NCBI RefSeq assembly: GCF_001447785.1
Contig: NW_015175991.1
Location: 120,712 to 184,711 of the forward strand
Direction: 5' to 3'
Origin: Gekko japonicus
Taxonomy: Eukaryota
Length of the DNA stretch: 64,000 bases
Shown here: positions 23,736 to 55,065 of the stretch, piece after piece
Position numbering within the stretch: position 1 is the first letter of the stretch
Layout of the letters: the number at the start of each line of letters is the position of its first letter
Notes under the pieces: generated by a model
The model's database searches: none
The model's input: only the letters and a program-made list of their open reading frames with translations
What the model was told of the DNA's origin: nothing
Program-made: the position numbers and the translations under genes

Positions 23736-24012
23736 AGAATAATTTGTGACCCATTCACAAGCTGAATATGGCCCACAAACCTTGGGGCCTGCCAGGTGCC
23801 ACACGGGTCCTGTGTTTTGGCAAGGCAGGCTATTGTCCCAAGAGAGTTTCAGAATATGAATACATGTGGATTAAATAAGGAACACTTTATTCTACTTTTA
23901 TACAGTGAATTGCAATAAAAATTATAGAACAAAGTTTGAGTCCAGTGGCAGCTTTAATACCAATAATGTTTTAATTCTGGCTATAAGCTTTAATTGGTTT
24001 GCACACTTCATC

Positions 24013-24342
24013 TGCGGTGGCTCAAGTGGTTAAGACGCTGAACTGCAGGCTGTAGTTCAGCAGTTCGAGACCCTAGTGTGCCGCATGATGGAGTGAGCTC
24101 CCATCTCTAGTTCCAGCTCCTGCCAACCTAGCAGTTCGAAAGCAAGAAATTGCAAGTAGATAAATCGGTACCGCTTCGGTGGGAAGGTAACAGCGTTCCG
24201 TACGCCTTGGTGTTTAGTCATGCCGGCCACATGACCACGGAAACGTCTTCAGACAGCGGCTCTTCGGCTTGGAAACGGAGATGAGCACCACAACCCTAGA
24301 GTCGGACTCGACTGGCTTTCGAGCAAGGGAACCTTTACCTTT
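24013..24342 (+). mobile_element. Sauria SINE, near full length
   Basis: tRNA-like head gtggctcaagtggttaag, body gccaacctagcagttcgaaagc...ggagatgagcacc, (ACCTTT)n tail; 10-bp TSD ACACTTCATC (24003-24012, 24343-24352). Confidence 0.9.
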
Positions 24343-25211
24343 ACACTTCATCAAATATGCCAAATTATAGTCTGAAATGAAATATTTTGATTCTATAATC
24401 TCTGTCACAACCTTTTCTGCCACTAGACAGAAAACAGCCTAAAAATAAAGCTGCTTCAGAAAGAAAGCAAAAAAGAACGAAAAGAAATACTTAAACCACC
24501 AAAAAATGCTGGATTGCAAAGATTTTATAAGAAAGGCTCAGTTGCCTTCAAAACTTCGGCTATGGGACTATGAATCCAAAACTTCCATTTTATTCAAGCC
24601 ATATATCGATTGGCGCAAGTTTAGAAATAATTATGAGAGAGTACTGTCGGGGCAGAGTTGCCATCTTCATGTAAAGTTTTTTTGTGCATGAACGTAATGT
24701 GGAGAAAGTTTTAGCTACTTCGTTTCTGTGGGCCATGTTGGTATTTTAAAAAGAGCTGGGTCAGTAAAAAAGTTGGCAACTACTCAGAACTGGGGAGACA
24801 GCAGGTGAGAGATTAGGGTTCCAAGGAAGACAGTTGTGTTTCAGCTGTGAGACTGCATGCTTCAGTACAGCAAACAAGAAATTTTTGTGGAATGTTGGTG
24901 TATAAAAATATAATTTGGTTTTAAGTGGTCAGCATTGACACTTGTTATGAAGATCTCATGGGTCCTATAAAAAAATCCAGATTATATGAAAGAGAAGAAG
25001 GCAATAGAGAGGCCCTGCAGGAGCTCAGCTGGGACAGAAAAGTAGGGGAGATTGTGGTAACTTCCTTAAATCATTGTTGTATTGTTAGTCATATAGAAAA
25101 ATCTTTTTAGATGTGAAAAAAATGTAAGAATTCCTGGATAATTTCTGTGCATCTCCAGAAACTGGAAGACATTAAAAACAAAATTGGGACACTTGTTTTC
25201 TTGTTTTGTAG

Positions 25212-44830: not shown

Positions 44831-45479
44831 AAATGAAGTAAATAAATAAGATGTAAACACTAGTTGCCTTTAACACTTTACATGGAAGAAACAGAACTCT
44901 GGTAAAGGTCTTTCCAAAACAATGAGCATAACCAAGCTCTTTTCTTACTCTTTTCTAGAACCAATGGGCCTAGAACCAACAGTTACCAACCTACTTATTG
45001 AAAAGTCATGATCTTCATCTCCATGGGCAGAGGAGGATTCTCAAAAAGCAACAACCCTAAAAAGGTAGTTTCTGTCATTCAGGTTACAGCCTGCTACGAA
45101 AAGACAAGCAACGATCATGGGGCATTACAGCTCAGCATACTAGCAGACTTGATGAAACAAATCCATGGCTTTATAAAAGGATAACAAATAAATAAGACCC
45201 GTTGATTAAACTACCAAAAGTGACGCCCAGTTAAATCAATGGAGCTTGTTAACAACTAGCTCGCCAACAGAGCAATCCGGTGCAGAGTTATCCAGTCTCA
45301 GCTCACTGAAACCAATGGACTTAGATCAGAATAACTCTAAGCAGGACAAGCCTCTCTATCCCCCACTTAAGAGGAGGGGAGGGAGAGAGACTCCTGTGTC
45401 ACCCCTACTCATTTGCCAGTAAGGCAGCCTGGGCACTGAATGCGAGGTCTACCCAACCTGTTCATGCAGCAAAGCCAGA

Positions 45480-46240
45480 AAAACGGGGCAACCGGAAAAC
45501 TACGGTTTCCACGGCGTGAGGCGGGTGACGGTGAAGCGTTTAAGAGATATCCGTTGCGTTTATAAACGTTTGTGGATTCTGAGTCCAATGGAGGACTCCT
45601 CCGCCCCGTCCCGAGGGCCATCCGAACTGAAGCGAAAGGTCCTGTAGCGCCTTAAAGCCGGGGGGGGACGGGGGGACGGACCTGGGAGCTCTATGCCGCA
45701 ACCGCGCTTCGTGTCTTTACGGTACCACCGTCTGCAGCTCACAGCCAGGCCAGCCTGGAGTCACTACAGCCTCCCTCCCCCCGGCTTTCAACCGGGAAGC
45801 GCCGGTCTCCTTCGCAGGAGCGGCGGGTCTCAGCCCTTCACTCACCCCGTCGCCTTGCTCCGCGGCGCGGTACAGCCCAGAAACCATCTCGTTGTGCAGC
45901 AATAGGAAGAGCGCCTCGTCCGCCATCTCCGACTTGTTCATGGTGGCCCCCTTCCCGGTTGGAGAGGCAGCCCCGAGGGCTCCTCTCGCACACACCCTCC
46001 GGCAAGGCCAACCAGGCCCTCCCTCCTCAGAGCTGCTGGCGGAACTGTCACCACAACCGCCGCCGGCTCCCGGGGCGGGGTTTCTAGAAGTCCCCGCCTC
46101 AGTTAGCTCGAGCTCCCGGGGAGTAGGAGGACTGGAAGGCTGCCTGGCTACTGAGAAGAGAGAGAGCTAGGCGTAGGATGAAGTCTTACGGGTGGTTTCG
46201 GGGCGCAAGTTTGGGAGTTCTCTCTTGGGCGGCTCGGTCC
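45480..46240. promoter_or_regulatory. CpG island/promoter of TRAPPC6B
   Basis: High GC and CpG around exon 1; GC boxes ggggcgggg (~46072) and ccccgcc (~46092). Confidence 0.8.
45846..45926 (-). CDS. TRAPPC6B: Trafficking protein particle complex subunit 6B, exon 1
   Basis: MADEALFLLLHNEMVSGLYRAAEQGDG|GTgagt; 6 exons total 477 nt = 158 aa + stop; an in-frame upstream ATG lies at 45941. Confidence 0.96.
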
Positions 46241-46614
46241 TTTGCATGTTCACCAGACTCTCAAGGAAATATGCAGATGATTTGCAGCCTTGCTGCAAAT
46301 CCTGTAGCTTTCTATGACTTTGGTATCGCGAGATAGTGCGTGTATTGGTGAGAACTGCCGCACTTTTGGGAAGCTCTTTAAATGCTTGGAAAGATCTACA
46401 TACATACAATGTATTGTTGTTATTGCATAGTCACGAATTAAGGGGAAACTTAAGTAGCTGCCATTTCATAATTTTTATCTCCTCCGTTCATATCCCAAAT
46501 GGACTTTGGATACTGGAGCACACCAGAGAATTTCAGAAGAAAATCAATTTGTGTTTCATACATTACAGCAAAATTCTCACTGTGTGGATCATGAAAACCT
46601 ATGGTTGGTTTTAA

Positions 46615-47502
46615 AATAAATGGGTGTGCCACAATATCTGTTTGTTTCAATGCACAACCTGTACTCTGGAAAAGAAGCTACAGTTAGGACAGAATATGGA
46701 GAAACAGAATGGTTTCCAATTAGCAAAGGTGCCAGACAAGGATTTTATCTCCCTGTCTCTTCAATCTATATGTAGAACATATCGTAAAGAAAGTTCACCT
46801 TTAGATGAAGGTGGAGTGAAAATTGGTGGAAGGAACATTAACAATTCGAGATACACAGATGATACCACATTAGTCACAGAAAATAGTGAAGACTTGAAAC
46901 AACTACTGCAGAAGGTTAAAGCAGAAAGTGCCAGAGCAGGAGTACAGTAGAACATCAAGAAGACAAAAGTAATGAATACTAGGGAGTTACACAACTTTAA
47001 GGCTGAGAATTAAGAAATTGAAATTCAGGATCTTCTATTCCTTGGCTCCAGTTTGGTGTAGTGGTTAAGAGCATGGACTCTAATCTGAGAGAACTGGGTA
47101 TGATTCCCCACTTCTCCACATGCAGCTGCTGGTGTGACCTTGTGTCAGTCATAAGTTCTTTCAGAGCTGTTCTCTCAAGGGAAGTTCTTGAGAGAGCTCC
47201 CTCAGCCTTACCTACCTCACAGGGTGTCTGTTGTGGGAAGAGGAAGGTAAACTGCTCTGAGACTTCATCCAGTAGTGGGCGGGGTATAAATCCAATCTCT
47301 TTTTCTCTTCTTCCATCCTCAACCAAAAGGGAGACTGCAGTGAAGCAATCAGAAGAAGGGAAGGGCAGCCAAAGCTAGAAAAAATTCTTAAGTATAAGGA
47401 TGTGTTGCTGGCAACCAAGATTGTTAATTCATGCCATAGTATTCCATGGTATTATATATGGGTGTGAAAGTTGGAAAGTCAAGAAAACTGACAGGAAGAA
47501 AA
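46615..47502 (+). mobile_element. RTE/BovB LINE fragment, left part
   Basis: GVKIGGRNINNSRYTDDTTL..ENSEDLKQLL.KVK.ES..AG, and YGCESW; interrupted by a SINE and by the L1. Confidence 0.88.
47049..47312 (+). mobile_element. tRNA-derived squamate SINE (Squam3-like) inserted in the BovB
   Basis: cagtttggtgtagtggttaagag head, gattccccacttctccacatgcagctgctgg body, pyrimidine (CTT) tail. Confidence 0.82.
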
Positions 47503-47681
47503 AAAATATTTTTTTTAAATTTTCTAAAAACTACAAGAAAATAGGGAAGAGGGGACTATAAACTATGGGAGAAAGTAAAGATAAACCACTAAAACTCAAG
47601 AGGTGGGGGTCATATAATGCTTACAATAAAATAGCTTTGAATAAGAAAAGAGTAATTTGTTACATTGTAGGTGATCATTCA

Positions 47682-47912
47682 GGAGCTGCAGTGGCTCAAG
47701 TGGTTAAGACGCTGAACTGCAGGCTGTGGAAGGTCAGTAGTTCAGTGGTTCAAGACCCGGGTGCCGCAAGACAGGGTGAGCTCCTGTCTCTAGTTCCAGC
47801 TTCTGCCAACCTAGCAGTTCAAAAGCAAGAAATTGCAAGTAGATAAATAGGGACCACTTCGGTGGGAAGGTAACAGCGTTCCGTGCACCTTGGTGTTTAG
47901 TCATGCCGGCCA
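47682..47912 (+). mobile_element. Sauria SINE inserted in the L1 3' region, cut off by the assembly gap
   Basis: Close match to 24013-24342. Confidence 0.88.
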
Positions 47913-48331
47913 NNNNNNNNNNNNNNNNNNNNNNNNNNNNNNNNNNNNNNNNNNNNNNNNNNNNNNNNNNNNNNNNNNNNNNNNNNNNNNNNNNNNNNNN
48001 NNNNNNNNNNNNNNNNNNNNNNNNNNNNNNNNNNNNNNNNNNNNNNNNNNNNNNNNNNNNNNNNNNNNNNNNNNNNNNNNNNNNNNNNNNNNNNNNNNNN
48101 NNNNNNNNNNNNNNNNNNNNNNNNNNNNNNNNNNNNNNNNNNNNNNNNNNNNNNNNNNNNNNNNNNNNNNNNNNNNNNNNNNNNNNNNNNNNNNNNNNNN
48201 NNNNNNNNNNNNNNNNNNNNNNNNNNNNNNNNNNNNNNNNNNNNNNNNNNNNNNNNNNNNNNNNNNNNNNNNNNNNNNNNNNNNNNNNNNNNNNNNNNNN
48301 NNNNNNNNNNNNNNNNNNNNNNNNNNNNNNN
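47913..48331. other. Assembly gap
   Basis: Run of N. Confidence 1.
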
Positions 48332-51300
48332 TTTTTTGTGTACAGATGCACGCCAAGTCTCCAGAAAAATGGAATCCAAGCTACAGGGTAAGTCTATATC
48401 CATTATCATTAACACCTGTTGTATGATCTGGGCCCAAAAATATTTGTGGGCAATTCCACTAGCAATGAGCAAAGTCTGCAACAGCTCCACACTTTTCCCA
48501 GCATTTATTAGAGATTTTGGGGTTTATTTTGTGTAAGACTACCGGGGTCATATACCACCTGTTCAGTATTTTGAATGAAGTGAATCTATTACTAAATATG
48601 TTCAACGTGTTACTGGGAGACGACCAAATTAGGTTCCAGTCTTCTTCAGTAATCATTTTTTGACAGTCTAATTCCCATTGACACTGGGATTTGAGACTAG
48701 TAATCCTATTCCCTCTCAATAGCAATTTGTACAGTTTACCTATCATACCTTTTATTTTTCCGTCCGAGTTTTTAAGGATTAGTTCAAATTTGTTAAGTGG
48801 TTTAGAGAATATTGACTTTCTGTATAACTTGGTTAGGACATTTTAAAGTTGCAAGTATTGAAACCAAAAGATTTTCCCATTTCGTTTATTTTCCATTTCT
48901 TGTTTACTCAGAGGGGCCCCATTATTCATTAAATCTATTAAGTGCACTATTCCTGCCTCTTTCCATGTCTGAAATGCATTTTCCTCTTGACTTGTTGGGA
49001 ACTAGTCCTGACTGAGAAAAGTGGAGAGCTGTGAGATTGGTGGTAAGAGCGTTTTCTTATGTGACTCCCAAATTTCCAAGGCCAACTTGAGAAACCAGTT
49101 ATGCAGATTCGCAGCTTGATTTTTATTGTTGTTTCTCCAGTATCGTTCTGAGAGGGAGATAGGCTGAGTTATTATTTCTTGTATTTGTTCCCAGCTAGTT
49201 TTGGTCTCATTAGTTAAGACCCATACTACGTTCGTAAGGTTAGCTGCAACATAATATTTATATAGGTCTAAGAAGTCTAAGCCTCCCCTCCTCGTTTTCC
49301 GCATGAGGGTATTAAATTTGACTCGTGGCTTTTTATAGCCCCAGAAGAAGTCATTTCCTGATTTCCATGTGTGGGATAGATGATGGAATTGCTCTGAACA
49401 GGAAAAAGAATTTAGGGAGAACAAAGCTTTTCAGTAAGCTTATCCACCCACAAAAATCCCAACTTGTGCCATTCTTTTAAACGTGCGCTTAAGTCCTTAA
49501 ACAGAGGTTGATGGTTCACTTTAACTAAGTCCTCGAGATCCCTCGGAATTTGGATTCCTAAACACCTCCAGTGGGTAGTCACCCAGTCAAAAGGAAGTTT
49601 TCACAGTTTCTTTTCCTCTGAGTCCGATATTAAGATAGAGGCAATTTTGGTTCCGGATAGATTTACCTTCAGACCTGTTAAGTGCTGAAAGTTCTGAAAT
49701 ACTTCTTGTAGCTTCAAAAACGAGGAATTTGGGTTAGAGAAATATATTATGAGGTCGTCAGCATAAAGGCTAATGGTATGCATTTGTTGTCCAATTTTAA
49801 TACTGGCAACCAGCAACCAGCCTGATTGCATTTGCTAATGGCTCTATTGCTAATGCAAATAGAATAGGTGACAATGGGCACCCTTGTCTGGTGCCTCTAT
49901 TCAACATTATTGGTCTGCTTAGAATGCTATTGATACGGATCCTAGCAAAGGATTTAGAATATACTGCTTTTATCGCATTTAGAAAATAACCCCCAAAGTT
50001 CATTGTCTTTAAGACTTGATGTAGGTAAGTAACTTCCACACTGTCAAAGGCTTTCTCTAAGTCAACCATGAGGATGATGGATTCCAGTTCTGTTCGTTTA
50101 CAATGAGATATTATGTTTAACGTTCTGTGAATGTTGTCTGTCATGTTTCTATTTGGAATAAAGCCTGTCTGGTTAGGATTGATATATACTGCTATAATTT
50201 TCTGTAAACTTTTAGCCAATACTGTCGGAAATATTTTAGCATCACAGTTTAGTCTGTATGAGCCAGGCGATTCTTTATCCTTATCTTCCTTTGTGATAGT
50301 GACAATATGAGATTGACCCCATGACAGTGGCTTGTCCCCTTTGAGCAGTATAGCACTGCAGACTCTAGCCAGAGACTCCGCTATGTCGAGGCTGAAGATT
50401 TTAAAAAATGCAGGGGTAAACCCATCACACACACACGTGCCGTGTTGGACTTGAGGTGTTTAATGGCATCCATGATTTCTTTCGAGGTGATGGTAGAGTC
50501 TAAAAATTGTTTATGTTCAGGTGAAAGTTCTTTGCACAGGTTTTTTCCCACCAGTAAATTCTGAATATCTTTTCCTGGAGGCTCATTCGATGTATATAAT
50601 TTCTGGTAAAAATCTGCAAAGCAGTTGACAGTTTGGTTTTGGTCAGTGTACCTTTGATGTTTTGAGTCTCGGATAGAGAAAATTCTGTGTTCAGAAATTT
50701 TCCTGTTAACTCTCCATTTTAAAATCTTTAGGTTTTGGGGACTTTTCTGCCAAAACTGTTCTTTCAAGAACAGTATATTCTTTTGGATCTTAGTTGTTTC
50801 TATGGTTTCTAGAATTCTGCGCTCGGCTAATAACTCTTTGTAGGTACTTTTGTTTCCCGTCCTTTTGTGTAGTGTTTCCAGCGTTTGAATTTTCTGAAGT
50901 AATGTATTTGTGCCTCTCTCTCTTTCTTTACTCTAGACGCTAGCGCTATCGACCTCCCTCTGGTTACCACTTTGAAGGCTTCCCACAGCGTGAACACATC
51001 TACCTCTCTATTATCATTTTCTTTGAAGTAATTGACTATTGTTGTTTTCTTCCTTACAAGTGTCTCTTAATAAAATGGAATTATTCAGTCTCCACACATT
51101 GCTTCTAAGTGTCCTTTCTTTTTTGCACAATTTACATTCTATGTACGCGTGGTCAGACCACATGAAAGAGCCTATGACTGCGTCCTTGACTCTATTCATT
51201 AAGGTGTCTGACACTAGGATGTAGTCTATACGCGTGTATACCTGATGTCTTGGTGAAAAGTAAGAGTAATCCCTTTCCCCCAGGTGAGTTTCTCTCCACA

Positions 51301-51810
51301 CATCCCGCAGCCGGTCTTTCAGTGCTGTGTATAATTTCTTGACGTTTTGATTTGGTGTTTTTCCTGGTTCTGTCCAGGTAATTGTCTACTATCATGTTAA
51401 AGTCCCCGCCTATAATTACCACACCTTTCTGGAAACTGCAGAGTTTGTTTAGAGTTTCCTCAATGAATTGTATTTGCTGTTTATTCGGGGCATAGATTGA
51501 AGCCAAAGTCAATGGCTCAGAGTCTACCAAACCCTGTACAAACAAGGGGTCTGCTGCTACTCATTCACATTTAAAATGCACCGAATTTGCTAACAGAATT
51601 GCCACTGCCCTTGCTTTGCTAGAGCCAGCAGCATAAAATTGCTGGTCAAACCACTTTGTTTTAAACACCAGATTCTCCGTAGCACATAAATGTGTTTCTT
51701 GGCAGAATAGAATTTTCGGATGAGATTTCAAAATAAAGGAAGTCACCCTTTTGCACTTGATACAGTTGTTAACACCTTGAACATTAATCGATCTTATTCT
51801 ATATACATCC
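48332..51810 (-). pseudogene. L1 ORF2 (APE endonuclease, reverse transcriptase, Cys-rich region), disrupted
   Basis: SINVQG, CQETHL, SIYAPN, GGDFN, TRIDYILVS, WSDHA; NQTGFIPNR, DLEKAFDSV, RGTRQGCPLSPILF, LYADDL; KILNRWYMTP..CWEKCG; frameshifts and stops. Confidence 0.92.
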
Positions 51811-52423
51811 AGTATTTTATAGTTTTTACTCTTTAAAAGTATTTCCACCGCAGAAATCCTTCCTCAAGAGCAGTGGGCTGAGACCAAGCTCAGAACAATT
51901 ACCCCTGTTCCCTAATTATGTTCACACTTACCCACTAACTTAACAACCCTACCTAAAGTTAAAGTTCTGCAAATAACTAACCACTAAGCACTTTTAATCC
52001 AACTCAAAGAAACAAAAACAAAAACTAATCCTATCCTTAACGTACACCTAACCACTAACTATATAAAGAACTGTCAAGCAGAACTGACACTCTTCCAAAG
52101 CGCTAGAGAGTGCCCCCTCCCCCCTCCCTTCCCCCCCAAAAAAACCAAGATAGGAGTTACTGGATACCTTTGTCAGCAACACGCCAACCTTTCCCTTCTA
52201 ACTAGAGAGGAAAAGGATCACAGCTCACTGCTGCTGCAGTGAGACTCCCTACACCACTGGGGACCAAGAATCAACTGTCTTTTCCCATCCCAAACCCTCC
52301 CCCCTTGAAGCTTAGCCAAAAAACATAACACATAAAAACAGCATTAGTTAAAAAACAAACTGCGATCATCAGGTCGAAAGATAAAGGTTCCCAAAAGCAT
52401 GCTGCCTCTCTTCTCTAGAACAG

Positions 52424-53422
52424 TCACGAGTCTTCCATGGGTGCCTCAGAGCTATTGTGCTGCCTCGGATTTTGATGTGGTGAAGGTGAGAAGGGAAGCT
52501 TTCTTTTATGGAAGCGTCGTTCAAATCCTTGCACCAGGGCAAAGCAAAGCATTTTCAGTACCACAACTGCCGAGTCTTCATCCCAGATCTCGTATCTTGT
52601 GCCGTGATGTGTGAAACAGAACCTTGCCGGGGTGACCCATTTGTATTTTATATTTGCTGCCAACAGCTTAGCAGTGAAGGGTTTGAGCTCCCTTCCATTT
52701 CTGGATGTCCTCAGCTGGGATGTCAGGGAAGACTTGTATTTCTTTTCCCTGATATCGCAGAGCACCTTTTGCTCTAGCTACTTCAAGGATCTTTTTCTTG
52801 GCTCTCAGATCTCCAAACGAGATCACAATGTCCCTTGCTTGCTTCCTGCCTGGGTTGTAGGGGGAGCCCTTTCGGTACACATTGGTAATTACAGGAGCAA
52901 CACCCTCTTCCAGCTCCAGTTCAGCAGCTAACCAGGACGACAGAAAGCACCTCAGATCGGCTGTGTTCTCTGCGTCTTTTTCAAAACCGCGAAATTTCAA
53001 GTTGCATTTTTTAAGGTCGGTTTCCAAAATCATCAATTTTTCTTTAATTTGGGAGTCAGCTGACTCGAGCTCACGAACATCCTCTTGAAGCAGTTCAGTC
53101 ATAGCCATTGCACTCGCCGCCACCTTCGCAGAGTGATTCACAGAGATTTTAATTTCGTCTAACTGTGCTTTCACTGGCTCAAATAAGGAGGAGAAGGTGT
53201 CTAGCAGCCTCTTTTCTAGGTTTGCGATAGAAATGTTAAAGTTTTCAGTTATTAGAAATGGTGGCAGCTGCGGGCCATTGCTCTGAGCGTCAGCCATTTT
53301 ACGTTCTTCTGATCCATTACTGGAGCAGGCTTCTTCTTTTTTTCTGACACTTTAAAATACGCCGACAGAGGGTTAGAGCCTGGAGGGACATGTTTTCCTT
53401 TCGTTCCCCCAGGCTGTGGCAT
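52424..53422 (-). pseudogene. L1 ORF1, ORF2-proximal copy (ORF1b), frameshifted
   Basis: Coiled coil, then NLKFRGF..RDIVISF..KKKILEVAR.KG.LRYQGKEIQVFPD..RELKPFT.KL..NIKYKW (L1 ORF1 RRM and CTD pattern); probable ATG at 53422. Confidence 0.85.
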
Positions 53423-53537
53423 CCTTAGGTGAAAAGATTAGTGGCTTACTTTTGACCACAGTTAAGCGAAGGGAGTATGGGGATGGGAGCACCAAATTCA
53501 AGCAGCCACCATCCTCGCCAGTCGCGCACACACCCCC

Positions 53538-54507
53538 TTTCCCTCAATCGATATCCTTGCTTGGGGGCGGCTGCCACACGTTCCAAATCCGAATCTTCTC
53601 CAGTAAGTGCTTCATCATCACTCCCCTTGTTGCTCTTGTCATCCTCTTCTCCTGTTGGATCCAGATGTTGCTGCAGAAACTCTCTTGCTTCATAACAGAG
53701 TCAGTTTTTCCCCTCTTATCTTTGAACTTGAAGAGTATGCCTTCGGGTACAATCCATTTGTAGGATATGTTATTCTTTTGTAGAAATAAAGCCAAGTTCT
53801 GTATTTTTTCCTTATTTCAAAAGGAATGTGTTTCAAAATTCTTATCTCCTTGCCATCAGTTTTAAGGGTAGTTCCATTTATTGGTTTTAAGATCTGATCC
53901 CTCACTTGTCTTCTGGAGAATCTTACCACCACCTCGCCGGGCAGATTATTTTTCTTTATGTAGTCTGAATATGACCTATAGATCACATCTATTTCGCCTT
54001 GAAGAAAATCCGTTTTAAAATCTGCAACCGCCCCCAAAGCATCACTCAAAATCTGTTTAAGATTCTCCCCTTTAATCTCAGGAACTCCTTGAAATCTCAG
54101 TATATAGCTTGCCTTTTCCATTTGTAGCTGTAACAGCTGGGCTTCATCAGAGTTTCTCTTCTTTTCCATCTCCTGCATTTGCTTTTTAACTTTTTTAGTC
54201 TTGGCATCCACTTCTTTAAAATTCTCGGCTGTTTGCTCTGTTGTTTTTTGAAGTCTCATCTAGTTGCTGTTGCTGTGCAGTGAAATTTTGATTGAGTGTT
54301 TTCATTTGCTCCAGCAGGGGTCGCAATGCTTCTGTTAGCATCATAGAGAACCCTATGGTTGTTTCCGGTTGCGTGACCGCACTCGCTGGGCTAGCACTTC
54401 CTGAAGGAGGCTTAGGTTTGTTTGCTTATCTTTCTCTTTTAAGTCCATTTTTATTTCCGGGGGGGTTCCTGCCCCCCCCGCTTACTTTAGGGGGGACTTT
54501 CAGCCAT
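53538..54507 (-). pseudogene. Second, dissimilar L1 ORF1, distal copy (ORF1a), frameshifted
   Basis: Coiled coil, then ILRFQGVPE..EIDVIYR..LPGEVVVRFSRRQVRDQIL..GKEIRILKHIP..NISYKWIVPEG, and an acidic tail. Confidence 0.82.
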
Positions 54508-54824
54508 TTCTCTGGTTCTTGTTTTAACCAAACTCACTTTCAATGTAGATCATGTAGATCTCGCCTTCAAACGTTTAAAACGCTCAACCTCCTCTCGCTT
54601 GTCCCTGTGTGCGTCTCTGAGTCCACAGCAGCTAGACCGTCAGGGCATCAGAACGCCTCAATCCACCAGCAGCGTGCCAGGAGAGAGGCGATCCTCAACG
54701 TCCCATGGCTAGGAGCCCTTCACAAAGGCTCCAGGGGGACGTGTACAATCGCTCCCCCCTCTCATCCTCTGGTTCACGAATTGTGTCCTTGGGAGCTGCC
54801 ATTAGATCGCCAAAACCGGAAGTC

Positions 54825-55065
54825 GACAGGAAGAAAATTGATTCCTTTGAAATGTGTTGGAGCATTTTACAGATACCCTGGACCTTCAAAAAAACACAAA
54901 TCAGTGGTTCCAGATCAAATAAAGCATGAACTCTCTCTAGAAGCTAAAATTACTAAACTGAGTCTATTGTACTTTGGCCACATTATGAGAAGACATGACT
55001 CAATGGAAAAGGCAATAATGCTAGGAAACATTTAAGGCAGCAGGAAAAGAGGAAGACCCAACATG
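54825..55065 (+). mobile_element. RTE/BovB LINE fragment, right part
   Basis: Resumes the frame broken at 47502: DRKKIDSFEMCW..IPWT..LEAKITKL.LLYFGHIMRR.DSMEKAIMLG. Confidence 0.88.

What the first reader, a model, noticed from the sequence alone, without database searches (positions are those of the whole stretch)
47490..54837. One L1 insertion carrying two different ORF1 genes in tandem (ORF1a-ORF1b-ORF2)
Seen: a single 13-bp TSD (GACAGGAAGAAAA), which splits a BovB reading frame (..KKTDRKK|IDSFEM..), encloses 7.3 kb. On the minus strand this reads 5'UTR (GACTTCCGG start) - ORF1a (~54507-53538) - ORF1b (~53422-52424) - ~600 bp spacer - ORF2. Each ORF1 has its own coiled coil, RRM and CTD pattern, and the two are too dissimilar to be a recent duplication. 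There is no polyA tail between them. Established: canonical vertebrate L1 has one ORF1. Inference: this is either a replicating three-ORF L1 family or a one-off chimera of two L1 lineages. This copy is frameshifted and inactive.
Basis: partly seen in the sequence, partly recalled or inferred. Interest (0 to 1): 0.8.

Follow-up and report, generated by a model that had tools for sequence, protein, structure and literature searches.

The report
Half-L1 module fused to full L1
A dead 7.3-kb retrotransposon insertion in a squamate genome really does carry two different L1 ORF1 genes in a row, but it looks like a one-off fusion of the front of an abundant ORF1-only "half-L1" with a complete, rare L1, not a member of a replicating three-gene L1 family.

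Summary
An exact 13-bp duplication (47490-47502 and 54825-54837) splits one BovB reading frame. On the minus strand it encloses 5'UTR-A, ORF1a, a 240-nt spacer, ORF1b, a 575-nt G-rich spacer and ORF2.

- **Both ORF1s are real L1 ORF1p.** Each has coiled coil, RRM and CTD. They are 25% identical and belong to separate lineages.
- **The two halves differ sharply in copy number.** In whole-genome reads at about 1x, 5'UTR-A plus ORF1a has depth 70-430. Everything from about 53540 onward (spacer, ORF1b, ORF2) has depth about 1.5.
- **ORF1a belongs to a family of hundreds of copies.** Other notes on this genome describe abundant 1.8-kb ORF1-only "half-L1" retroposons, which are probably that family.
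- **ORF1b-ORF2 is a complete L1 on its own.** It is single-copy and has the architecture of Anolis "clade 2" L1s, with its own 5' end at the junction.

Best reading (about 0.5): one chimeric retrotransposition event, by template switch or chimeric RNA. Main rival (about 0.3): an L1 nested in a half-L1, with its tail and duplication hidden in the 419-N gap. The expected missing sequence (about 390 nt) leaves little room for that. A replicating three-ORF family is unlikely (about 0.08).

The parts
47490..47502 (.). Target-site duplication, copy next to the 3' end of the composite
   Evidence: Exact 13-mer, present only twice in the window.
47503..47680 (-). 3'-terminal 178 nt of the composite. 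It is AT-rich and ends in A8 followed by TATTTT. It is either the L1-B 3'UTR (chimera reading) or the half-L1 3'UTR (nested reading).
   Evidence: It has no other copy in the window. Its copy number was not measured.
47681..47912 (+). Later insertion of a tRNA-derived squamate SINE that runs into the gap
   Evidence: 86% identical to a second copy at 24012-24229. That copy continues for about 120 nt more.
47913..48331 (.). Assembly gap of 419 N (length estimated). Not filled.
   Evidence: Expected content: about 120 nt of SINE plus about 267 nt of ORF2 end.
48332..51848 (-). L1-type ORF2 (EN, RT, Cys-rich C-terminal region), broken by at least 10 frameshifts or stops and with its C-terminal end missing in the gap
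   Evidence: Pfam Exo_endo_phos_2 and RVT_1. Human L1 ORF2p 8SXT at E 5.5e-33, and C-terminal piece aligned to residues 1071-1143 of 1275. Frames shown.
51849..52423 (-). Long G-rich spacer between ORF1b and ORF2
   Evidence: GC 0.42-0.47 and GC skew -0.38 to -0.55 on the plus strand. This matches the description of Anolis clade 2 spacers (PMC5381506).
52424..53297 (-). ORF1b: L1 ORF1p with coiled coil, RRM and CTD, one frameshift near 52700; single-copy lineage
   Evidence: Nearest relative is Gekko kuhli protein P0001. Read depth about 1.5.
53298..53537 (-). Short 5'UTR of the inner L1 (L1-B). Its 5' end is GGGGGTGTGTGCGCG.
   Evidence: Single-copy depth. The length of about 240 nt equals the clade 2 average of 0.23 kb, and the 5' end resembles the consensus GGGNGCTGCGCATGC. 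It shows no homology to 5'UTR-A.
53533..53543 (-). Junction between the high-copy module A and the single-copy L1-B. The G-run could belong to either side (possible microhomology).
   Evidence: Depth steps from about 130 to about 3. The excess in bin 53380-53548 places the step near 53540. P0002 C-end comparison.
53533..54507 (-). ORF1a: L1 ORF1p of an abundant family, with at least 4 frameshifts or stops. Its last few codons and true stop are probably missing.
   Evidence: Depth 100-430.
54508..54824 (-). 5'UTR-A. It starts with GACTTCCGGTT, which contains an ETS-type site.
   Evidence: Depth 70-135. The motif equals the zebrafish L1 5' consensus GGACTTCCGGTT (PMC5381506).
54825..54837 (.). 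Target-site duplication, copy next to the 5' end of the composite
46500..47489 (+). Host BovB/RTE-type LINE, left part
   Evidence: RT motifs and a continuous frame across the empty site.
54838..55065 (+). Host BovB/RTE-type LINE, right part
   Evidence: Read depth about 1500.

Best explanation
This is a single chimeric retrotransposition product.

- **The inner element.** A full-length L1 of a rare lineage (L1-B) was being copied into a BovB target. It consists of a 240-nt 5'UTR, ORF1b, a G-rich spacer, ORF2 and a 3'UTR.
- **The switch.** When the reverse transcriptase reached the 5' end of L1-B RNA it carried on along a second RNA. That RNA came from an abundant family (5'UTR-A plus ORF1a, most likely this genome's ORF1-only half-L1 retroposons). 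The enzyme entered a few codons before the ORF1a stop, at a shared G-run, and ran to that RNA's own 5' end (GACTTCCGG..).
- **An equivalent route.** A chimeric RNA could have formed before reverse transcription. It could arise by read-through from a half-L1 promoter into an adjacent L1-B (5' transduction), or by RNA ligation or trans-splicing.
- **The result.** One insertion with one 13-bp duplication, one 3' tail and no internal poly(A). It holds two unrelated 5'UTRs and two divergent ORF1 genes ahead of one ORF2.
- **Its fate.** It left no detectable progeny. It later decayed through frameshifts in all three ORFs and took a SINE insertion in its 3' region.

What is shown: the anatomy, the identity of the proteins, the copy-number step and the integrity of the BovB site. 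What is inferred: the single event, the mechanism of joining, and the identity of module A with the half-L1 family.
For: - **Duplication and host site.** The exact 13-bp duplication occurs only twice in 64 kb. The BovB frame is continuous across it and BovB paralog reads bridge the empty site.
- **Copy-number step.** With whole-genome raw reads at about 1x and at least 85% likeness, depth averages about 1.5 over 50000-53379. It jumps to 70-430 over 53549-54900. The step falls near 53540. Logan contigs of a second run show the same step, about 65 against 17,000-215,000.
- **L1-B is complete by itself.** It has a 5'UTR of about 240 nt, a 5' end resembling the Anolis clade 2 consensus, and a long G-rich spacer. 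Its ORF1b matches L1 ORF1p and its ORF2 matches L1 ORF2p.
- **Two lineages.** ORF1a and ORF1b lie on opposite sides of a branch of length 3.6 with 100% support.
- **No internal tail.** No poly(A) run and no repeat of the junction sequence occurs in the visible 3' region.
- The missing ORF2 end is about 89 aa, or 267 nt. The missing SINE part is about 120 nt. Together they account for about 390 of the 419 N.
- **Precedent.** Single-duplication L1 chimeras with a non-autonomous partner at the 5' side are documented: U6/L1, Alu/L1, and mRNA joined to full-length L1 (bioRxiv 10.1101/2025.02.02.635956).
Against: - Nested insertions are far commonest as a class compared with chimeric ones. This genome is rich in half-L1 copies that could act as targets.
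- The gap length is only an estimate, so a hidden second tail and duplication cannot be excluded.
- I did not measure the copy number of the 3'-terminal 178 nt, which would decide the matter.
- The 3' end (A8 then TATTTT) and a duplication that starts with T in the sense orientation are not the classical L1 signature.
- Reads that physically span 53540 were not individually listed. The spanning contig reaches only 26 nt into module A.
Confidence: 0.5

Rival explanations
1. Two sequential insertions. An ORF1-only half-L1 of about 1.8 kb inserted into the BovB and made the 13-bp duplication. Later a full-length L1-B inserted in the same orientation into the last codons of its ORF1. The L1-B 3'UTR, its A-tail, its own duplication and about 300 nt of half-L1 3'UTR lie in the assembly gap. 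The visible 47503-47680 is then the half-L1 tail.
For: - Module A is high-copy.
- Many notes on this genome describe complete 1.7-1.9-kb half-L1 retroposons with poly(A) and duplications.
- Module A plus about 0.5 kb would make just such an element.
- Nested insertions are very common in general.
- The gap sits exactly where the telltale sequences would be.
- A high-copy half-L1 3'UTR in the gap would help explain why assembly failed there.
Against: - The gap would have to hold at least about 790 nt. That total is ORF2 end 267, L1-B 3'UTR at least 100, tail and duplication about 25, half-L1 3'UTR about 290, and SINE 120. The estimate is 419.
- No repeat of the junction-proximal sequence and no A-run is visible on either side of the gap.
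Confidence: 0.3
2. A replicating tri-cistronic L1 lineage (ORF1a-ORF1b-ORF2). It would be small or old, and this is one decayed member.
For: - At birth the composite had a promoter-bearing 5' end, three ORFs and a normal 3' end.
- The likeness threshold of 85% would miss copies more than 15% diverged. Most family-A reads are themselves only 85-90% alike.
- ORF1b and ORF2 depth reaches 3-5 in a few bins.
Against: - ORF1b, the spacer and ORF2 sit at single-copy depth, about 1.5. ORF1a is 70-280 times higher, so nearly all ORF1a copies are not linked to ORF1b.
- Reads in ORF1b look allelic, with zero other differences (table 3).
- There is no second copy in the window.
- I found no description of L1 with two ORF1 genes in the literature searched.
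Confidence: 0.08
3. Assembly artefact. The contig was wrongly joined at the repeat boundary near 53540, or the scaffold was wrongly joined across the gap. Parts of different loci then appear as one element.
For: - The junction coincides with a boundary between unique and repeated sequence, where short-read assemblers err.
- The assembly has gaps and rests on short reads.
- The independent contig stops 26 nt into the repeat.
Against: - The two outer ends carry matching halves of one BovB copy with an exact 13-bp duplication. A chance mis-join would not produce that.
- Module A here is more than 10% diverged from most relatives, so it is effectively unique for assembly. About 39 reads at 99% or more amount to about 1x over the whole stretch.
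- No strongly supported loose end was reported at 53540.
Confidence: 0.07

Closest known systems
LINE-1 chimeric insertions (U6/L1, Alu/L1, mRNA or 5'-transduced sequence joined to full-length L1), formed by template switching, RNA ligation or splicing, or read-through
   Same: Two RNAs are joined head to tail in the sense orientation. An L1 forms the 3' part. There is one duplication, one 3' tail and no poly(A) at the internal junction. The 5' partner is a non-autonomous passenger of the same machinery.
   Different: Here the 5' partner is itself an L1-derived coding module (5'UTR plus ORF1) of another lineage, so the product has two ORF1 genes. The host is a squamate. The partner is cut internally, near its ORF1 stop, rather than at its natural 3' end.
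HAL1 (half-L1), the ORF1-only non-autonomous derivatives of L1 in mammals
   Same: Module A is a high-copy unit of 5'UTR plus an L1-type ORF1. This genome is reported to hold many 1.8-kb ORF1-only elements (definition of HAL1 in PMC5753468).
   Different: In this locus the ORF1-only module lacks its own 3'UTR and tail and is followed by a complete L1. I could not align it with the half-L1 copies of the other windows. HAL1 is described from mammals only in the literature I could search.
Anolis carolinensis 'clade 2' L1 families (Boissinot and Sookdeo 2016)
   Same: L1-B shares their architecture: a short 5'UTR (about 0.24 kb), a long G-rich spacer (about 575 nt), a G-rich 5' terminus with a TGCGC core, and an A-rich ORF2.
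   Different: The 5' terminus matches the published consensus only in part. No sequence comparison with Anolis families was possible. The nearest protein is from a gecko.
L1TD1, a mammalian host gene built from two tandem L1 ORF1-like regions
   Same: Two ORF1-derived coding regions lie in tandem at one locus. The published analysis could not tell whether two insertions or a duplication made them (PMC4161310).
   Different: L1TD1 is a conserved, spliced host gene. This locus is a decayed retroelement with no sign of domestication.
Replacement of 5'UTR or ORF1 modules during L1 evolution (mosaic L1 lineages in mammals)
   Same: A foreign 5'UTR and ORF1 sit in front of an existing L1 body. This is the kind of intermediate such replacements would need (5'UTR replacement discussed in PMC5381506).
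   Different: Here the resident 5'UTR and ORF1 are still present, and there is no evidence that the composite ever replicated.

Membership tests
L1 ORF1p (type II: coiled coil, RRM, CTD), tested on ORF1a | Sequence homology to L1 ORF1p across RRM and CTD | tested here: met
   Alone it reaches only Pfam Transposase_22 E 0.051, but over the full domain. A profile with 24 relatives hits human ORF1p 2YKP at E 1.5e-13 across coiled coil, RRM and CTD, and hits 2LDY, the RRM-CTD solution structure that titles human LINE-1 ORF1p, at E 3.2e-11. The CTD piece aligns right after the RRM in the same relatives.
L1 ORF1p (type II: coiled coil, RRM, CTD), tested on ORF1a | Fold: a long N-terminal helix followed by an RRM | tested here: met
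   AlphaFold model with pLDDT 83.4, helix 2-50 followed by a beta-alpha-beta RRM. The top ten Foldseek PDB hits are all human L1 ORF1p, with TM about 0.6 and E 3e-6.
L1 ORF1p (type II: coiled coil, RRM, CTD), tested on ORF1b | Sequence homology to L1 ORF1p | tested here: met
   Pfam Transposase_22 at E 5.5e-5, above the curated cut-off. 2YKP at E 2.9e-6 and 2LDY at E 5.4e-5. The YKW motif of the CTD aligns with ORF1a.
L1-clade LINE (inner element L1-B) | ORF2 with an APE-type endonuclease, an L1-type RT and a Cys-rich C-terminal motif | tested here: met
   Exo_endo_phos_2 and RVT_1. The RT piece matches human L1 ORF2p at E 5.5e-33, far better than R2 at 5e-16. The C-terminal piece aligns to ORF2p residues 1071-1143, including the CxxC..H motif.
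LINE-1 chimeric insertion (single event) | One target-site duplication flanks both parts | tested here: met
   Exact 13-bp duplication with a continuous BovB host.
LINE-1 chimeric insertion (single event) | No poly(A) or second duplication at or after the internal junction | tested here: inconclusive
   None is present in the visible sequence. The 419-N gap lies exactly where a second tail and duplication would sit. The length budget argues against them.
LINE-1 chimeric insertion (single event) | Both parts arrived at the same time (orthologous empty site, or equal age) | not testable with these tools
   No related genomes or other family copies were available. The density of disruptions is similar in the parts, but that measure is too coarse.
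HAL1-like or half-L1 retroposon (module A) | A high-copy unit consisting of an L1 5' end plus ORF1, without ORF2 | tested here: inconclusive
   High copy number limited to 5'UTR-A and ORF1a is shown. I could not see what follows ORF1a in the other copies. The link to the half-L1 family rests on unchecked notes from other windows.
HAL1-like or half-L1 retroposon (module A) | Its own 3'UTR and tail directly after ORF1 | tested here: not met
   In this locus ORF1a is followed directly by the L1-B 5'UTR, and its 3'UTR is absent from the visible sequence. This copy is therefore not a half-L1 element as such, only its front module.
Replicating three-ORF L1 family | Several independent copies share the ORF1a/ORF1b junction | tested here: not met
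   Depth over ORF1b, the junction-proximal 5'UTR-B and ORF2 is about 1x at 85% likeness or more. There is no second copy in the window. Copies more than 15% diverged would be missed.

The most novel reading that the evidence does not exclude
The composite was, for a time, a functioning tri-cistronic L1. It would have been transcribed from the half-L1 promoter and would have made two different ORF1 proteins. It might have a few old progeny more than 15% diverged. Such an element would be the missing intermediate by which L1 lineages swap 5'UTR and ORF1 modules, or by which ORF1-only parasites and autonomous L1s exchange parts.
Probability: 0.08. Interest if true: 0.75.

Novelty: new variant of a known kind. 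Interest (0 to 1): 0.35.

Why it matters
If the single-event reading holds, this locus is a physical record that RNA of an ORF1-only parasite and RNA of a particular autonomous L1 lineage met in one reverse-transcription complex. That would name a likely helper for the half-L1 family of this squamate.

It would also show a simple route by which a foreign promoter-plus-ORF1 module can be placed in front of a complete L1. L1 evolution is known to proceed by replacing 5' modules, and the mechanism is debated. L1TD1 likewise began as two adjacent ORF1 copies.

As a single, dead, possibly nested copy it is otherwise ordinary genomic debris.

Tried and rejected
- **Other copies in the window.** tblastn and blastn found none for ORF1a, ORF1b, ORF2 or the 3' end. 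Only the SINE has a second copy.
- **Word-based protein search.** It found nothing for ORF1a. For ORF1b it found one Gekko kuhli fragment.
- **Metagenome scan for ORF1a relatives.** Nothing found.
- **Earlier findings by sequence.** Blank.
- **Homology between the two 5'UTRs.** None. This rejects the idea that the inner spacer is a duplicated copy of the outer 5'UTR.
- **Second duplication.** I found no repeat of the junction sequence near the 3' end.
- **Single-sequence AlphaFold model of ORF1a.** Too poor to use, pLDDT 52. It was replaced by an alignment-based model.
- **Literature on L1 with two ORF1 genes.** My memory that megabat L1 had two ORF1s was wrong. Nothing turned up. The HAL1 paper by Bao and Jurka (2010) is not held.
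- **Expression.** RNA-run depth follows DNA copy number in both module A and BovB, at a ratio of about 0.3-0.4. It is therefore no evidence of specific expression.
- **ORF1a ending at TGA 53546.** Rejected after the frame correction.
Full report
**1. Observation**

The 13-mer GACAGGAAGAAAA occurs exactly twice in the window, at 47490-47502 and 54825-54837. Removing what lies between, and keeping one copy, restores one reading frame of an RTE/BovB-type LINE (..YGCESWKVKKTDRKKIDSFEMCW..). RT motifs lie upstream. Reads from other BovB copies laid on the right flank continue, at 54825, with letters that match window 47461-47489 (loose ends). The host element is therefore continuous and the duplication is real.

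Between the two copies, the minus strand reads as follows:
- a 317-nt 5'UTR that starts with GACTTCCGGTT;
- ORF1a;
- about 240 nt of spacer;
- ORF1b;
- about 575 nt of G-rich spacer;
- a frameshifted ORF2;
- the 419-N gap;
- a plus-strand SINE;
- 178 nt of AT-rich sequence ending in A8 then TATTTT.

**2. The proteins**

ORF1b hits Pfam Transposase_22 above its cut-off and hits human L1 ORF1p structures (2YKP at E 2.9e-6).

ORF1a was left open by Pfam (E 0.051) and by the word search. I therefore ran the exhaustive search.
- It found 245 relatives, the best at 47% identity.
- The ones that carry names are squamate proteins: Erythrolamprus, Gekko japonicus, Pseudonaja ("L1 transposable element RRM domain-containing protein"), and a Pantherophis model in which the ORF1 is fused to an endonuclease domain.
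- A profile of ORF1a with 24 relatives hits human ORF1p at E 1.5e-13 over coiled coil, RRM and CTD.
- An alignment-based AlphaFold model (pLDDT 83) has the human ORF1p trimer as all of its top ten matches.

ORF1a and ORF1b are 25% identical. In a quick maximum-likelihood tree, ORF1b groups with a Gekko kuhli protein on a long, fully supported branch, apart from ORF1a and all 79 of its relatives. The careful tree search did not finish. ORF2 is L1-type: the RT piece matches human ORF2p at E 5.5e-33.

**3. A correction at the junction**

Of the family reads laid on ORF1a, 57 of 83 carry an extra T at 53688. In the frame this restores, the TGA at 53546-53544 is not a stop. ORF1a reads ..YRLRERG up to 53533. 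This parallels the C-end of its best relative, P0002 (..DLRARGAKQPP then stop). That alignment is weak, so this step is inference.

Module A therefore seems to be cut a few codons before its true stop. The cut falls at a G-run (53537-53533) that could equally be the start of the inner element.

**4. The decisive result: copy number**

I laid about 1.9 Gb of whole-genome raw reads (about 1x) on 50000-55060 at 85% likeness or more.

| Region | Summed depth |
|---|---|
| 50000-53379 (ORF2 5' half, spacer, ORF1b, most of the inner 5'UTR) | about 1.5 on average (range 0-4.9) |
| Bin 53380-53548 | 9 |
| 53549-54900 (ORF1a and 5'UTR-A) | 68-433 |
| BovB flank | about 1500 |

- The small excess in the transition bin places the step near 53540.
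- Logan contigs of an older run show the same step. One of its contigs covers 52105-53566 with ten differences and stops where the repeat begins.
- Reads in ORF1b look allelic.
- Most reads on module A are only 85-90% alike, so this copy is old or belongs to a diverged subfamily.

Nearly all copies of ORF1a in this genome are therefore not followed by ORF1b. ORF1b-ORF2 is essentially single-copy.

**5. What the two parts are**

The inner element is a complete L1 by itself. It has a short 5'UTR of about 240 nt, a 5' end GGGGGTGTGTGCGCG, and a long G-rich spacer. This is the architecture that Boissinot and Sookdeo describe for Anolis clade 2 L1s. They report a 5'UTR of 0.23 kb, a spacer of 257-1032 bp with G-rich stretches, and a conserved terminus GGGNGCTGCGCATGC (PMC5381506). 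The match of the terminus is only partial. A separate first-reader note (s1-831021) also saw an L1-type 5' end at this junction.

The outer 5' end GACTTCCGGTT equals the conserved zebrafish L1 terminus GGACTTCCGGTT from the same paper. The two 5'UTRs are unrelated.

For module A, earlier notes on this genome report about 98 sightings of complete 1.7-1.9-kb ORF1-only "half-L1" retroposons with tails and duplications. That fits the high copy number, which is limited to 5'UTR-A and ORF1a. I could not align module A with those copies, so the link remains a lead.

**6. The gap**

As the program note asked, I tested this first in the sense that is possible.
- The left edge of the gap lies inside a plus-strand SINE (47681-47912).
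- The right edge lies in the ORF2 C-terminal domain on the minus strand.

The two sides therefore belong to different elements, and no frame can run across the gap. Continuity cannot be shown from the sequence. Only the matching BovB halves and the duplication tie the two contigs together.

I only estimated how much known sequence must be missing.
- The last visible ORF2 residue before the frame change aligns to residue 1143 of 1275 of human ORF2p, and 43 more codons are visible. About 89 codons (267 nt) are therefore missing.
- A second SINE copy in the window runs about 120 nt further than this one.

Together that makes about 390 of the 419 N.

**7. Explanations**

(a) **Single chimeric event** (confidence about 0.5). 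Either the L1-B reverse transcription continued onto a module-A RNA, or a chimeric RNA was made by read-through, ligation or splicing. This fits the following:
- the single duplication;
- the absence of any internal A-run or repeat of the junction sequence;
- the intact 5' termini of both parts;
- the possible G-run microhomology;
- the gap budget.

L1 chimeras of this build are documented in human (U6/L1, Alu/L1, mRNA joined to full-length L1, 5' transduction).

(b) **Nested insertion** of L1-B into a resident half-L1 (about 0.3). Nesting is common and half-L1 targets abound. But the gap would have to hold at least about 790 nt.

(c) **A replicating three-ORF family** (about 0.08). This goes against the depth data. 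Copies more than 15% diverged would, however, be missed.

(d) **Mis-assembly** (about 0.07). This is unlikely given the matching BovB halves.

**8. State and activity**

- ORF1a has at least four disruptions, ORF1b has one, and ORF2 has at least ten.
- A SINE has inserted in the 3' region.
- RNA-run depth tracks DNA copy number (ratio about 0.3-0.4 in both module A and BovB), so there is no evidence of specific expression.

**9. Novelty**

In the literature I could search, I found no description of an L1 with two ORF1 genes, nor of half-L1 elements outside mammals. The closest parallels are L1 chimeric insertions, HAL1 and the two-ORF1 origin of L1TD1.

As a single decayed copy whose single-event origin is not yet proven, it is a new variant of a known kind and of moderate interest.

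**10. Limits**

- Read laying and the look-up of sequencing runs allow one call each, and I used mine before the 3' end became the key question.

Noticed in passing
window 53549-54824, and notes from other windows of this genome: The 5'UTR-A plus ORF1a module is present at roughly 10^2-10^3 copies in the whole-genome reads. The scan holds about 98 notes on 1.7-1.9-kb ORF1-only half-L1 retroposons in this genome. I found no published description of such elements in squamates.
   Followed up: partly
window 54814-54824 (minus strand): The outer element starts with GACTTCCGGTT. This is identical to the conserved 5' terminus reported for zebrafish L1 families and unlike the terminus reported for Anolis L1. 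It contains an ETS-type ACTTCCGG site.
   Followed up: partly
window 47503-47520: The 3' end is A8 followed by TATTTT, and in the sense orientation the duplication begins with TTTT. The priming strand therefore ended in AAAA and would pair with a U-run, not with poly(A). This is not the classical TT/AAAA L1 signature, and I cannot explain it.
   Followed up: no
window 47681-47912 and 24012-24350: Two copies of a tRNA-derived squamate SINE, 86% identical. The complete copy ends in a CCTTTAC-type repeat typical of BovB-dependent SINEs.
   Followed up: partly
window 45400-46250: A GC-rich island (60-66% GC over about 850 bp) lies about 1.3 kb upstream of the BovB and L1 cluster. It may be a CpG island or a first exon.
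   Followed up: no
window 53887-54055: Read depth peaks here, in the RRM core of ORF1a, at 433 against about 130 on either side. Several L1 or half-L1 subfamilies probably share this most conserved stretch at 85% likeness or more.
   Followed up: no
window 50228, 50250, 51232, 52381, 52563: At these single-copy positions nearly all reads and contigs of other runs differ from the window. One case is a 12-nt insertion after 50250 and another is TAGC after 52381. These are individual differences or small assembly errors in the reference.
   Followed up: no
protein P0001 (Gekko kuhli) against window 52427-53297: The only database relative of ORF1b is a 178-aa gecko protein, 53-70% identical by BLAST and 81% over the trimmed alignment columns. 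The window's organism may therefore be a gecko or a close relative.
   Followed up: partly
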